Source of the DNA: Podarcis gaigeae
Lineage: Eukaryota
Strand: one strand, 5' to 3'
Length of the DNA stretch: 64,000 nucleotides
Assembly: GCA_964106915.2 (NCBI GenBank)
Contig: OZ066930.1
The number at the start of each line of letters is the position of its first letter. Within the stretch, counting starts at the first letter, position 1. Made by a program: the position numbers and the translations under genes. Below, one piece after another: positions 2,282-56,911 of the stretch. The notes under the pieces were generated by a model that ran no database searches, was not told the origin of the DNA, and saw nothing but the letters and a program-made list of their open reading frames with translations.

Positions 2282-2584
2282 CATAAGAATAGCTGCCATA
2301 TATGGAGTCAGACCATTGGTCCATCTAACTCAGTAGTGTCTACACCAGGGATAGTCAATGTGGTGCCCTCAGGCTGTTGTTGGACTACAAATCCCAGCAG
2401 CCCCAGCCAGGTATCGCCAATGGTCAGGGATGTGGCTACCCCTGGTCTACACTGACTGGCAACAATCACTCAGAGTTTAAGGCGGGCATTCTTTCCCAGC
2501 CCTAACTGGAGATGCTGGGGATCAAACCTGGGATCTTCTGTGTGCAAAGCAGATGCCTCTACCACTGAGCTACAGCCCTTCCCC
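2282..2584 (-). mobile_element. tRNA(Ala)-like-headed SINE (abundant squamate family, possibly Squam2), interrupted by a MITE
   Basis: Minus strand reads GGGCTGTAGCTCAGTGGTAGAG (A box) ... CCCAGGTTTGATCCCCAGCATCTCCA (B box). The body matches many other copies in the window. Confidence 0.8.
2346..2444. mobile_element. hAT-type MITE inserted in the SINE
   Basis: CAGGGATAG...CTACCCCTG termini with a perfect 8-bp TSD gtctacac (2338-2345 and 2445-2452). Confidence 0.85.
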
Positions 2585-7562: not shown

Positions 7563-8155
7563 GTCGAAATAAACTAAAAAATTGTCTAGTAGCACCTTAG
7601 AGACGAACTAAGTTTGTTCTGGGCATAAGATTTGTGTGCATGCACAGATCTGAAGAAGTGTGCATGCACACAAAAGCTTATACCCAGAACAAACTTAGTT
7701 CGTCTCTAAGGTGCTAAAAAGGTAAAGGTAAAAGGACCCCTGACCATTAGGTCCAGTGGTGGATGACTCTGGGGTTGCGGCGCTCATCTCGCTTTACTGG
7801 CCAAGGGTGCCGGGGTACAGCTTCCGAGTCATGTGGCCAGCATGACTAAGCCGCTTCTGGTGAACCAGAGCAGCGCACGGAAACACTGTTTACCTTCCCA
7901 CCGGAGTGGTACCTATTTATCTACTTGCACTTTGTGCTTTCGAACTGCTAGGTTGGCAGGAGCAAGGACCGAGCAATAGGAGCTCACCCCGTCACGGGAA
8001 TTTGAACCGCCAACCTTCTGATTGGCAAGCCCTAGGCTCTGTAGTTTAACCCACGGCGCCACCCGCGTCCCTTCTCTAAGGTGCTACTGGACAATTATTT
8101 TATTTATTTATTTATTTTGACTGCGTCAGACCAACACAGCTACCTACCTGAATCT
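7563..8155. mobile_element. Penelope-like element remnant in inverted (fold-back) arrangement, containing a Sauria SINE
   Basis: 7563-7646 is the reverse complement of about 7659-7716 plus 8087-8121. The right arm matches 56876-57001. A 10-bp direct repeat flanks the insert. Confidence 0.8.
7717..8072 (-). mobile_element. Sauria SINE (Squam1), full length
   Basis: Minus strand starts GGGACGCGGGTGGCGCCGTGGG, has B box GGTTCAAATTCC and an (ACCTTT)n tail; 14-bp TSD tctctaaggtgcta at 7703-7716 and 8073-8086. Confidence 0.93.
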
Positions 8156-12890: not shown

Positions 12891-15065
12891 AGAAGGCATG
12901 TCCTTTTTAATTATTCCAGTAGTAGAAGCCTGCATCGGACCTTAAGATTCTCCACCGTCCTATTTTATTTCAACCTCAAGCTTGAATTTTGACTGAATCC
13001 GTCAGGACCAAGTCCAACACCAAGAACACACAGAGGCTGAAACAGAGGAAAACAGGCGCTTCGCCCCCTCTCTCACCAAAGAAAACCAGCACTGACTTCA
13101 CTGTTCAATGCGCATACTATGCTAAGTGCGTGAAATGGCTTGCTTTTTACCGAGCAGGCATCCTTTAGTTGGTTTACATTCCCTTTTATCTCTATAAATA
13201 TTTATATATATTATTCCATATGCAACAGCCGCCACACATTAAGAGGGTTGCAATTCCCCCTCCCCTTTTTTTGCACAGTCAATCCAACAGAAGGCCAGAT
13301 GGTTTTGTTTCAGAAAGTAGAATGTTTTGAAGTTATTTATTTGTTCCTTACGCTGATGTTTATTCCCTCGAGGGAACCTAGCGTCTCCTTTGATAGCACA
13401 GTGTCACTTTAATAAACTCAAACTGAAGCAAAGTCGCAGAGACAACTGGTGCAGCAGTGTCTGGAACGTTGCATGAGGTGCAATTCAAACCCCTACTCAG
13501 TTGTGAAACTCACAGAGCAGCCCTGCCACCCCCAAGAATCCCAAGAACCTTTGTTTGTTAAGAGCACTGGGAACTATAGTTCTGTGATTGAATAAACAAC
13601 ATTTCCCAGGATTCTTTGGAGCATGCCATGCGCTTAAAATGAGCTTTAGAGGGTCAATGACTGTTGAACTAAAAAAACCAACGACCCCATATAGTTTATT
13701 TGACAGTAACCCCATCAGACCTACAAAGTCTAATATCTGCATGACCCACAAATGATTGTGAAATTTACCCTAAACCACGGCTGAAAATGAAGCAGGACAG
13801 AATTTATTCCAGTTTGGTTAATCCAGAAGACTTTTTGTCTTTGGCTCTGCCCACTGTCAGCTCTGACCTCACTCACTCTCAGCACACTGGGGCCCTGAGG
13901 AGCTCACACCAGAGGGAATTTATCCATCAACAGAAAAATTCATTGCCACCTTCACTATACACCGTCCTGACCTCAAGTGAATGAAAGCTGAGTTAAAATA
14001 ATAATAAAAGATAAGGCTCCTTGCTTTCACTTCCCACAAAGATGATTGATGATTGTGTGATTAACACATACATTACACATATGTGCAGCTTTCTCTCCTG
14101 TATATATTTACTTACATATATATGCGTATACATAGTAAAAATCTATGAGGTATTGGGGCATGTGGGGTGGGGAGAGACATTCCTCAGAGAAGCAGGGGGC
14201 AACAGACTGTTCTCAATAGTTCACCCACCAAAGCTTTCTTTCCAAAAAAATGAAAGGATTTTAAGACTCTGCCATGACCCTTACAGGTTACATCTCTGCT
14301 CAACAAGCCTGTTTGCCAAAAAGGAGAGAAAAGCAGAATCCCACTACAGACTAGAAAGGCCACAAAGACTACACTCCCACCAGCTATGGTGTTATATTGA
14401 TTTGGTGTTTGCTACTTAATCTGAATGAATGTCACTAAGGCAATGGAACACAAAAGGAAATCTTGCGGTATCAGTTTTATACAATCCTAGTTACGCAGGC
14501 AATTAAACCAGATATTTAGCTCAATTAAGTGCTTCCTTTGTGTTAAAAAAAAGAGGAGGGGGGAATATATCTGGCCTAATCAATCAGTGCTGGAAGGAAA
14601 GGAAAGAATTGCTTTATAGTTTTATTCTCTAAAGCAGCGGTAGTCAATGTCTTGCCTTCAAGATATTGTTGGAATGTAACTCTGCCCCTGCCAGCATGTC
14701 CAGTGGTGATGGAGGGTGGGAGTTGTAGTCCAACAACATGTGGAGAACACCATGTTATAACTGGCCAAAATGCCTCTTTTTTTGGAGCCATGCCCAGCAG
14801 ATGATGTCTGAGGAGAGAGAGTCCTACTTAATTCCCCCTTGGTGACCGGTCTAAAGAGGCATGATGGTATCATGCTCTATGACTAGTTGATCATTTAAGC
14901 AGTAAAATGCAACAGTGGTTTGTGCACATTGTTCTCTACTTCATGTGACCTTGCCTTGTCACTTGGGATTGGAAGACAAAAGGGACCAAGCTGATCCTCA
15001 GAAATGTGTGGAACTGGAAAACAACAGGAGGAACCAGGGATATGGACTTGAAAAGTTTTTGTTGT

Positions 15066-15671
15066 TTAGTCGTTTAGTCGTGTCCGACTCTTCGTGACCC
15101 CATGGACCAGAGCACGCCAGGCACTCCTGTCTTCCACTGCCTCCCGCAGTTTGGTCAGACTCATGTTTGTGGCTTCGAGAACACTGTCCAACCATCTCGC
15201 CCTCTGTCGTCCCCTTCTCCTTGTGCCTTCCATCTTTCCCAACATCAGGGTCTTTTCCAGGGAGTCTTCTCTTCTCATGAGGTGGCCAAAGTATTGGAGC
15301 CTCAGCTTCACAATCTGTCCTTCCAGTGAGCACTCAGGGCTGATTTCCTGAAGAATGGATGCGTTTGATCTTCTTGCAGTCCATGGGACTCTCAAGAGTC
15401 TCCTCCAGCACCATAATTCAAAAGCATCAATTCTTCGGCGATCAGCCTTCTTTATGGTCCAGCTCTCACTTTCAAACATCACTACTGGGAAAACCATGGC
15501 TTTAACTATACGGACCTTTATTGGCAAGGTGATGTCTCTGCTTTTTAAGATGCTGTCTAGCTTTGCCATCGCCTTTCTCCCAAGGAGCAGGTGTCTTTTA
15601 ATTTCGTGACTGCTGCCACCATCTGCAGTGATCATGGAGCCCAAGAAAGTAAAATCTCTCACTGCCTCCAT
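15066..15671 (-). pseudogene. BovB ORF C-terminal remnant (201 aa, lacks endonuclease and RT catalytic core)
   Basis: Near-identical to the last about 200 aa of ORF 1-1191; YADD and all upstream motifs are deleted. Confidence 0.9.
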
Positions 15672-15795
15672 TTCTTACACCTTCCGACCTGAGGGGCTCA
15701 TCTTCCAGCATCATAACTTTCATATGCCTGTTGTCTTTGTCCATGGAGTTTTCTTGGCAGGGATACTGGAGTGGCTTGCCGGTTCCTGCTCCAGG

Positions 15796-15924
15796 TGCAT
15801 CACGTTTGGTCAAAACTCTCCACTATGACCTGTCCATCTTGGGTGGCCCTGCACGGCATAGCTCATAGCTTCTCTGAGTTATTCAAGCCCCTTCGCCACG
15901 GCAAGGCAGTGATCCATGAAGGGG
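15796..15924 (-). ncRNA. Predicted HDV-like self-cleaving ribozyme at the BovB 5' end
   Basis: Manual fold: P1 CCCCUUC/GAAGGGG, P2 UGGAUCAC/GUGAUGCA (7 of 8 pairs), P3 GCC/GGC, L3 UUGCCGU, P4 AACUC/GAGUU plus CUAUGA/UCAUAG, J4/2 CCAA. Activity untested. Confidence 0.55.
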
Positions 15925-16264
15925 ACTTGAAAAGTAGCAGTTCACTAAAACATACCACTGGACTTTCCATCACACTATCTTCTGTACTCTGGCTGGCAGC
16001 AGCTCCCCAGGGCCTCCAGCAAAGAAAGGTCTTCCTTATTACATGCTAACTGTTCCTTTAGTTTGATTTGATGCTGGGGACCAAATCGAAGACCTTCTGC
16101 AGGCAAAGCATAACCTTGTCTACTGAGCTAGAAGGATGACTCAAGACAATTTCCCTAGTGGTTCACCAACAAGGGCTTAACTGTGCACGTGCACATGTGT
16201 GTGTGTAATCAGAAAACACTTGTGTACCCACAGATAAACTCTACACTGCAGGAATGGATAAAAT

Positions 16265-52705: not shown

Positions 52706-52888
52706 GGGAAGGCCTTTAACTCAGTGACAGAGTGTCTGCTTTGCAAAGCAGAAAGTCCTAGGTTCAATACCTGGCATGCTGGAAGTGTGCCCTGCCTGAA
52801 ACCCTAGAGAGCTGCTGCCAGTCAGTGTAGACAATATTAAACTAGATGGATCAGTGGTTTGACTGAGTGTAAGGCATCTTCCTATATT
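52706..52888 (+). mobile_element. tRNA(Ala)-like SINE
   Basis: TAACTCAGTGA A box, CTTTGCAA anticodon-loop remnant, GGTTCAATACC B box and shared body. Confidence 0.8.
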
Positions 52889-53519: not shown

Positions 53520-54430
53520 TTTTATTTATTGCATTTATATCCCACCTTTTCTCCAAAGAGCTCAAAGTGGCACACATGCTTCCTCATTTAGGTCACCCAG
53601 CAAGCTTCATGGGTGAGCAGGAATTCATAGAATCATAGAGTTGGAAGAGACCACAAGGGCCATCGAGTCCAACCCCCTGCCAACAGGAAACACCATCAGA
53701 GCACTCCTGACATATGGTTGTCAAGCCTCTGCTTAAAGACCTCCAAAGAAGGAGACTCCACCACACTCCTTGGCAGCAAATTCCACTGTCGAACAGCTCT
53801 TACTGTCAGGAAGTTCTTCCTAATGTTTAGGTGGAATTTTCTTTCTTGTAGTTTGGATCCATTGCTCCGTGTCCGCTTCTCTGGAGCAGCAGAAAACAAC
53901 CTTTCTCCCTCCTCTATGTGACATCCTTTTATATATTTAAACATGGCTATCATATCACCCCTTAACCTCCTCTTCTCCAGGCTAAACATGCCCAGCTCCC
54001 TTAGCCGTTCCTCATAAGGCATCGTTTTCAGGCCTTTGACCATTTTGGTTGCCCTCCTCTGGACACGTTCCAGTTTGTCAGTGTCCTTCTTGAACTGTGG
54101 TGCCCAGAACTGGACACAGTACTCCAGGTGAGGTCTGACCAGAGCAGAATACAGTGGCACTATTACTTTCCCTTGATCTAGATGCTATACTCCTATTGAT
54201 GCAGCCCAGAATTGCATTGGCTTTTTTAGCTGCTGCGTCACACTGTTGGCTCATGTCAAGTTTGTGGGCAACCAAGACTCCTAGATCCTTTTCACATGTA
54301 CTGCTCTCAAGCCAGGTGTCACCCATCTTGTATTTGTGCCTCTCATTTTTTTTGCCCACGTGCAAAGTTCAAACCCTTGTCTCCCAGACCATAGTCCAAT
54401 ACTCTAGCCATTACACTACCACTGGCTCTC
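53520..54430 (-). mobile_element. Squam3-like SINE split by the CR1 insertion (parts 53520-53625 and 54368-54430)
   Basis: ggtcacccagcaagcttcatgggtgagcaggaattc|aaacccttgtctcc...cactaccactggctctc is contiguous SINE sequence once the CR1 is removed. Confidence 0.75.
53626..54367 (-). mobile_element. Relatively young 5'-truncated CR1 LINE
   Basis: EKDLGVLV...KKANAILGCINR and [20 protein letters not shown]...RLRGDMI...WNLLP; one frameshift near 54165; (ATTCTATG) tail. Confidence 0.95.
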
Positions 54431-56873: not shown

Positions 56874-56911
56874 TATCTGAAGAAGTGTGCATGCACACGA
56901 AAGCTCATACC
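56874..56911 (+). ncRNA. Predicted minimal type I hammerhead ribozyme motif (Penelope-type)
   Basis: CUGAAGA-A, stem II GUGUGC-AU-GCACAC, GAAA, palindromic AGCU stem III, UC cleavage site; stem I has only 3 bp in this copy. Confidence 0.65.

What the first reader, a model, noticed from the sequence alone, without database searches (positions are those of the whole stretch)
15796..15924. HDV-like self-cleaving ribozyme fold that starts exactly at the BovB 5' boundary
Seen (minus strand): P1 CCCCUUC (15924-15918) pairs with GAAGGGG (15894-15888). P3 GCC (15907-15905) pairs with GGC (15897-15895) and closes the 7-nt loop UUGCCGU. P2 UGGAUCAC (15916-15909) pairs with GUGAUGCA (15803-15796) with one mismatch, extended by U15908-A15805 with C15804 bulged. 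A long P4 is formed by AACUC/GAGUU and CUAUGA/UCAUAG. J4/2 is C-C-A-A with the candidate catalytic C at 15809. The strand order P1-P2-P3-L3-P3'-P1'-P4-J4/2-P2' is the HDV topology. The first P1 base lies at the TSD edge (2-nt overlap), where cleavage would define the transcript 5' end. Established: HDV-like ribozymes process the 5' ends of R2, some RTE and L1Tc elements, and as I recall the L1Tc Pr77 ribozyme also begins with C. I do not know of one described for BovB, but could not check the literature. Inference: BovB may excise itself from host transcripts without needing its own promoter, which could aid its horizontal transfer. Caveat: P1.1 is weak (at best U-G) and this copy has a P2 mismatch.
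Basis: partly seen in the sequence, partly recalled or inferred. Interest (0 to 1): 0.85.

Follow-up and report, generated by a model that had tools for sequence, protein, structure and literature searches.

The report
Self-cutting RNA fronting lizard BovB
The first 129 bases of this lizard copy of BovB, a jumping gene known for crossing between species, can fold into a self-cutting RNA of a known type that probably frees the element's RNA from host transcripts, and cattle-type BovB has deleted the cutting core.

Summary
Window 15924-15057(-) is a TSD-flanked, internally deleted BovB/RTE copy from a lacertid lizard, and its 5' end has the HDV topology as described. Two corrections: P1.1 is a G15902-C15887 Watson-Crick pair, not a weak U-G, and the P2 mismatch is private to this copy. 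Family 5' ends pile up at 15924/15925. In four full-length relatives from two RTE families the TSD ends exactly at P1's first base. A rotifer-type sister family carries a canonical HDV fold at the same place, with 6 of 11 core pairs swapped on both sides. Twelve ruminant-type BovB loci lack the 18-nt L3/P3'/P1' core, and the longer ones carry a new leader; a mite relative has a twister-like ribozyme instead. Cleavage is inferred, not shown: Rfam misses the BovB fold, the lowest-energy fold differs, and this copy's flank can block P1.1. HDV-like ribozymes are already reported for RTE-clade LINEs (Ruminski 2011, via PMC5786205); I found no BovB report. The scan noted the same on other copies in this genome (s1-692056, s1-697990). 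New member of a known kind.

The parts
15057..15924 (-). Internally deleted (bipartite) BovB/RTE copy: ~248 nt of 5' end joined to ~620 nt of 3' end
   Evidence: blastn to full-length Zootoca copy L044: 96% (5' part) and 95% (3' part); TSD
15925..15935 (-). 5' copy of the target-site duplication (next two C, 15924-15923, may be target or element)
15044..15056 (-). 3' copy of the target-site duplication
15918..15924 (-). P1 5' strand; predicted cut between U15925 and C15924
   Evidence: family 5' ends at 15924/15925; TSD edges in relatives
15908..15916 (-). P2 5' strand (U15908 pairs A15805 only if C15804 is bulged)
15895..15907 (-). P3 (3 bp) and 7-nt L3 with U at position 1 and G at position 6; G15902 is the P1.1 partner
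15888..15894 (-). P1 3' strand
15887..15887 (-). C that pairs with G15902 (single-pair P1.1)
   Evidence: same register as the U-A pair in rotifer-type RTE
15811..15886 (-). Long P4 domain (~77 nt, -21 kcal/mol alone)
   Evidence: A-U to G-C swap in Komodo copy
15804..15810 (-). J4/2 with candidate catalytic C15809 (C-N-R-A in lizard and ruminant copies)
   Evidence: catalysis inferred
15796..15803 (-). P2 3' strand; G15798 is a copy-specific mismatch
15926..15931 (-). Flank hexamer complementary to 15887-15882; can extend P1 by 6 bp and block P1.1 in this copy
15882..15899 (-). 18-nt segment (end of L3, P3', P1', P1.1 partner) absent from ruminant-type BovB
15676..15677 (-). Internal deletion junction (~2350 nt missing; GAAGG similarity on both sides)
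15066..15671 (-). Open C-terminal 201 codons of the BovB reverse-transcriptase ORF
   Evidence: 94% to P0156
1..1202 (+). Second BovB copy (3' part, cut by the window edge), used as protein query

Best explanation
The 5' end of lizard BovB is an HDV-like (nested double-pseudoknot) self-cleaving ribozyme. When a copy is transcribed from upstream, the RNA folds P1/P1.1/P2/P3/P4 and C15809 with Mg2+ cuts the bond just 5' of C15924. That releases an element RNA starting exactly at P1, which is reverse transcribed at a new site, so full-length insertions begin at P1's first base. Shown: fold compatibility, position at the family boundary, conservation and pair swaps in relatives. Inferred: chemistry, activity, use in cells. 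This copy is a decayed bipartite derivative and is probably weaker than the family's master elements (P2 mismatch, flank pairing over the P1.1 partner).
For: Helices verified. In a DNA-type run, depth falls from ~1e6 to ~80 at the edge, with loose ends at 15924 (60 contigs) and 15925 (39) and unlike flanks. TSD ends exactly at P1 base 1 in L044, L036, L037, L045, 2 nt before it in L034, and 0-2 nt into it here. Rotifer-type RTEs (about 60% protein identity) have a canonical fold scoring 31-37 bits on Rfam HDV-F-prausnitzii (E 0.002-0.04, below gathering), 100% paired with 3 double swaps. Against BovB, 4 of 7 P1 pairs plus one P3 pair and the P1.1 pair are swapped on both sides while L3 keeps U....GU and base 1 stays C (positions matched by structure, not by sequence alignment). 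Insect-like L035 (74% protein identity) has the same layout with different P2/P3/P4 sequence. P2 U-A to C-G in ruminants; P4 A-U to G-C in Komodo. RTE-clade LINEs are reported to carry 5' ribozymes (PMC5786205). L1Tc/ingi ribozymes cleave with C at +1 and a single-pair P1.1 (PMC3185411; PMC4035085).
Against: No Rfam HDV model matches the BovB copy even at E 10. A model from the rotifer-type fold does not find BovB. The lowest-energy nested fold pairs P3/L3 with the P4 insert, z 0.31. Covariation among BovB copies alone is weak (35/500 shuffles). L3 position 3 is G and P2 needs a bulged C, both off the usual consensus. No sharp RNA-end pile-up, and some RNA reads run through the site. Some well-folded trypanosome elements were inactive in vitro (PMC4035085).
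Confidence: 0.8

Rival explanations
1. The fold is a catalytically dead or marginal relic in BovB. The 5' end is set by an internal Pol II promoter starting at +1, and the structure is kept for RNA stability, translation or protein binding.
For: P2 and P4 persist, with a compensatory swap, in ruminant BovB that lacks the core, so part of the structure may have a non-cleaving role. Non-consensus L3 and J4/2-P2 junction. L1Tc Pr77 is also a promoter.
Against: P1, P3, L3 U/G and P1.1 are intact in Zootoca and Komodo copies and largely so in an old mammalian copy. The boundary equals the predicted cut in two families, and in the twister-bearing mite element the TSD ends at the twister cut site instead (cut site from my own knowledge of twister), so the boundary appears to follow the ribozyme.
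Confidence: 0.14
2. The pairings are chance complementarities in a conserved 5' UTR whose real fold is the alternative helix joining P3/L3 to the P4 insert.
For: The alternative is the MFE in window, Zootoca and Komodo copies; no Rfam hit.
Against: The pseudoknot estimate (P2+P3+P4 plus P1) is about 5-11 kcal/mol lower than the nested MFE in those three copies, ignoring loop costs. Descriptor chance is low. The same topology recurs at base 1 of divergent relatives with different sequence.
Confidence: 0.06

Closest known systems
[quoted passage not shown] 2011, cited in PMC5786205 and PMC6765202; original not held)
   Same: Same LINE clade, same position, same topology, same proposed role of releasing the element from a co-transcript.
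   Different: I found no report for BovB or a vertebrate RTE in the searchable library, but could not read Ruminski 2011 or its supplement. The BovB version has a G-C P1.1, a ~77-nt P4 and a bulged C at the P2 end.
L1TcRz / Pr77 of trypanosome L1Tc, NARTc, ingi, SIDER (PMC3185411, PMC4035085)
   Same: Starts with C at +1, single-pair P1.1, sensitive to upstream bases that extend P1, kept in internally deleted derivatives.
   Different: 77 nt with short P4; Ingi clade; shown active and shown to double as a promoter. Neither is tested for BovB.
R2 element ribozymes (PMC3774820)
   Same: HDV topology defining the transcript 5' end; variable P4.
   Different: Site-specific rDNA element, P1 often partly made of 28S rRNA; BovB inserts widely and encodes both P1 strands.
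Twister variants of Schistosoma Perere-3 RTE (PMC8501958)
   Same: RTE element whose TSD abuts the ribozyme cut; the mite relative L046 found here is of this kind.
   Different: Different ribozyme class.
Bipartite non-autonomous RTE derivatives such as Bov-A (PMC5786205, PMC4494074)
   Same: 5' end joined to 3' end by internal deletion.
   Different: This junction was not shown to be shared by other copies; most laid reads and contigs leave the reference at it, so it may be a single event.

Membership tests
HDV-like ribozyme | Strand order P1-P2-P3-L3-P3'-P1'-P4-J4/2-P2' | tested here: met
HDV-like ribozyme | 7-bp P1 beginning at the cleavage site | tested here: met
   7 WC pairs; base 1 is C-G, not the G.U of HDV, as in L1Tc/ingi
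HDV-like ribozyme | 3-bp P3 and 7-8 nt L3 with U and G of the reverse wobble | tested here: met
   U15904 and G15899; kept in lizard, rotifer-type and insect-like elements
HDV-like ribozyme | P1.1 of 1-2 pairs | tested here: met
   One pair, G15902-C15887 (inverted relative to HDV's C-G); U-A plus C-G in rotifer-type. Second position is U.U.
HDV-like ribozyme | J4/2 C-N-R-A with catalytic C correctly spaced from P2 | tested here: inconclusive
   C-N-R-A present and C conserved in most copies, but the spacing needs a bulged C15804
HDV-like ribozyme | Match to a curated HDV covariance model | tested here: not met
   No Rfam HDV hit for the BovB copy; sub-threshold hits for rotifer-type relatives. 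Rfam models are sequence-narrow and lack pseudoknots.
HDV-like ribozyme | Covariation of P1/P2/P3 | tested here: inconclusive
   Swaps across families and single swaps in P2 and P4 within BovB; too few sequences for significance
HDV-like ribozyme | Mg2+-dependent self-cleavage leaving 5'-OH at +1 | not testable with these tools
   Needs a bench assay; RNA reads give only a gradual one-strand decline
BovB / RTE-clade LINE | APE + RT single ORF grouping with ruminant BovB | tested here: met
   94-95% to P0156 (Podarcis cluster; EN and RT Pfam domains), about 80% to ruminant proteins; tree groups lacertid, Komodo and Bos rows (94/92)
BovB / RTE-clade LINE | TSD and short 3' repeat tail | tested here: met
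   11-13 bp TSD; CAA-type tail
Bipartite non-autonomous RTE family | Same internal junction in many copies | tested here: inconclusive
   Most reads and contigs leave the reference at 15676-15680; shared copies not shown

The most novel reading that the evidence does not exclude
The BovB lineage treats its 5' processing module as exchangeable: an HDV-like ribozyme in lizards and invertebrate relatives, a twister in a mite relative, and in ruminants a deletion of the catalytic core with gain of a long leader while P2/P4 are kept for a second, non-catalytic job. Promoter-independent release by the ribozyme would be one reason RTE/BovB establishes in unrelated hosts, with host-adapted lineages later trading it for a promoter.
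Probability: 0.3. Interest if true: 0.72.

Novelty: new member of a known kind. Interest (0 to 1): 0.52.

Why it matters
BovB is the main case of horizontally transferred LINEs in vertebrates (12% of the cow genome, PMC6036668), and how its RNA gets a 5' end is not described in the papers I could search. A ribozyme gives a direct, cheap test of one explanation for why RTE elements cross hosts. It also implies many potential intronic cleavage sites in squamate transcripts. RTE-1_MD UTRs are already used for RNA-only gene insertion (PMC13708176), where 5' ribozyme folds are known to matter for R2. The ruminant deletion is a natural knockout for comparison.

Tried and rejected
Rfam at gathering and E-value thresholds: no HDV hit on the window copy. 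Covariance model from three rotifer-type sequences: no cross-detection of BovB, model too narrow. Pattern scan of viral contigs: four hits with no BovB/RT context, treated as chance; protein scan of viral contigs empty. L001 and L047 (more distant RTEs): no HDV core found by my descriptor, L047's contig may stop short. L035: no TSD found, so its boundary and P1 length (6 or 7 bp) are unresolved. Two ENA loci gave no DNA. Ruminski 2011, Webb 2009 and Walsh 2013 are not held. One search used a structure mis-set by 3 columns in P4 and is superseded. The bacterial promoter scan is not relevant to a lizard. U-G P1.1 register rejected: the homologous register gives G-C. C15808 as catalytic base rejected for the family: it is usually A in other copies.

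Full report
Setting. The window is from a lacertid lizard: the BovB fragment at 1-1202 is 95% identical in protein to P0156, whose named cluster members are Podarcis muralis entries. The finding lies at the 5' end of a second copy, 15924-15057 on the minus strand. It matches a full-length Zootoca element (L044) at 96% over its first 248 nt and 95% over its last 630 nt, with about 2350 nt missing at 15677/15676. An 11-13 bp TSD flanks it; the two C at 15924-15923 can be read as target or element.

Observation. P1.1 was misread: L3 position 3 (G15902) pairs with C15887, the first base after P1', which is the register where rotifer-type relatives have U-A. The P2 mismatch at G15798 is private; the laid reads and contigs carry the pairing base in practically all cases. 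A descriptor for the topology hits 0.8 times per 64 kb of random sequence and 0 of 3000 randomised segments; the chance of a hit starting at the element edge is about 3e-5. The descriptor was written knowing this sequence, so this is an upper bound on significance.

Is P1 the family's first base? In contigs of a run that holds 81% of the stretch's words (probably DNA of a related lizard), depth falls from about 1e6 to about 80 beyond the edge, and loose ends pile up at 15924 (60 contigs) and 15925 (39) with unlike flanks. In TSD-flanked full-length relatives the duplication ends exactly before P1's first C in Zootoca L044 and in three rotifer-type elements (L036, L037, L045), and 2 nt before it in Komodo L034. 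An old mammalian copy (L022) also starts its match at that point.

Relatives. The rotifer-type family (about 60% protein identity) has a compact canonical fold with 2-bp P1.1 and G-C-Y-A-A J4/2. It scores 31-37 bits on Rfam's HDV-F-prausnitzii model, below the gathering score of 44, and is fully paired with three double swaps among three sequences. An insect-like element (L035, 74%) has the BovB layout, with long P4 and P2' just before the conserved downstream box, but different helix sequences. Within BovB, Komodo has an A-U to G-C swap in P4 and ruminants a U-A to C-G swap in P2; this alone is not significant. A mite RTE (L046) instead starts with a type-P1 twister match (61.8 bits, E 9e-12, gathering 67.2), and its TSD ends at the U/AAC step, which from my own knowledge is the twister cut site. 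The element boundary thus appears to follow the ribozyme.

Ruminants. All 12 ruminant-type loci with a readable 5' region lack 18 nt equivalent to 15899-15882, that is the end of L3, P3', P1' and the P1.1 partner. Those long enough to tell share a different leader of 250-350 nt or more upstream. P2, P4 and J4/2 remain recognisable. The protein tree places ruminants beside Komodo inside the ribozyme-bearing group (support 90/90 and 94/92), so loss is the likelier direction. The ruminant label rests on 77-81% identity groups that include Bos entries. That the leader is a promoter, or LTR-derived (RTE-BovB/BTLTR1 chimeras are described in PMC12075945), was not tested.

Against. Rfam finds nothing on the BovB copy, and a model of the rotifer-type fold does not find it. 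The nested MFE pairs P3/L3 with the P4 insert, though a rough pseudoknot sum that ignores loop costs is 5-11 kcal/mol lower in the three lizard copies. The J4/2-P2 junction needs a bulged C. In this copy the flank 15931-15926 pairs with 15887-15882, extending P1 and hiding the P1.1 partner, a known brake in L1Tc and R2 (PMC3185411). RNA reads show no sharp end pile-up. On one strand, sense to the element if the libraries are dUTP-type, depth falls to 0.20-0.25 at the edge while the other strand stays at 0.87-1.08. This fits RNA 5' ends near +1 but cannot tell cleavage from initiation, and the library convention and species are not known to me.

Mechanism. Most likely (0.8 for the family) an HDV-like ribozyme cuts upstream-initiated RNA just before C15924 using C15809 and Mg2+, giving the 5' end seen in insertions. 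Position, fold and conservation are shown; chemistry and use in cells are inferred from HDV, R2 and L1Tc. I put activity of this particular copy at about 0.35.

Known versus new. Six LINE clades including RTE are reported to carry 5' ribozymes, and bipartite RTE derivatives usually keep the 5' end (PMC5786205; PMC6765202). Searches for BovB or Bov-B with ribozyme gave no paper whose title or the passages I read describe one; Ruminski 2011 could not be read. The scan's notes list the same fold on other BovB copies in this genome, and one follow-up also reports the cattle deletion; I had found the deletion before seeing that follow-up. Verdict: real feature, new member of a known kind, with a testable evolutionary contrast.

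Noticed in passing
L046:931-1002: Mite (Dinothrombium) RTE begins with a type-P1 twister match (61.8 bits, below gathering); TSD ends at the U/AAC step.
   Followed up: partly
L036:1298-1375, L037:148-225, L045:1287-1364: Rotifer-type RTE family with a compact canonical HDV-like fold at base 1; best candidates for a first cleavage assay.
   Followed up: partly
L002-L004, L006-L010, L013, L015, L021, L026: Ruminant-type BovB lacks the 18-nt catalytic core but mostly keeps P2 (with a compensatory swap) and P4; longer loci share a GC-rich leader with internal repeats.
   Followed up: partly
L036:1191-1261: A tRNA gene lies 36 nt upstream of the rotifer RTE insertion; not seen in L037 or L045.
   Followed up: no
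window 56876-56903 and 7590-7716: Minimal hammerhead-like core (CUGAAGA, short stem, GAAA) in a small insert; related copies form a ~127-bp palindrome at 7590-7716 with altered cores. No Rfam hammerhead hit at E 1.
   Followed up: partly
window 2507-2579 and 52710-52782: tRNA-like matches (31-32 bits) within a repeated sequence, probably SINE heads.
   Followed up: no
window 53696-54160: ORF that looks like the C-terminal end of a CR1-type LINE protein (from memory; not searched).
   Followed up: no
L042, L043: BovB sequences about 75-79% identical to P0156 sit in two bacterial genome assemblies as short contigs, most likely animal DNA contamination.
   Followed up: no
L033:269-408: An old mammalian RTE copy has its own ~19-nt deletion just after P1', distinct from the ruminant-type deletion.
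   Followed up: no
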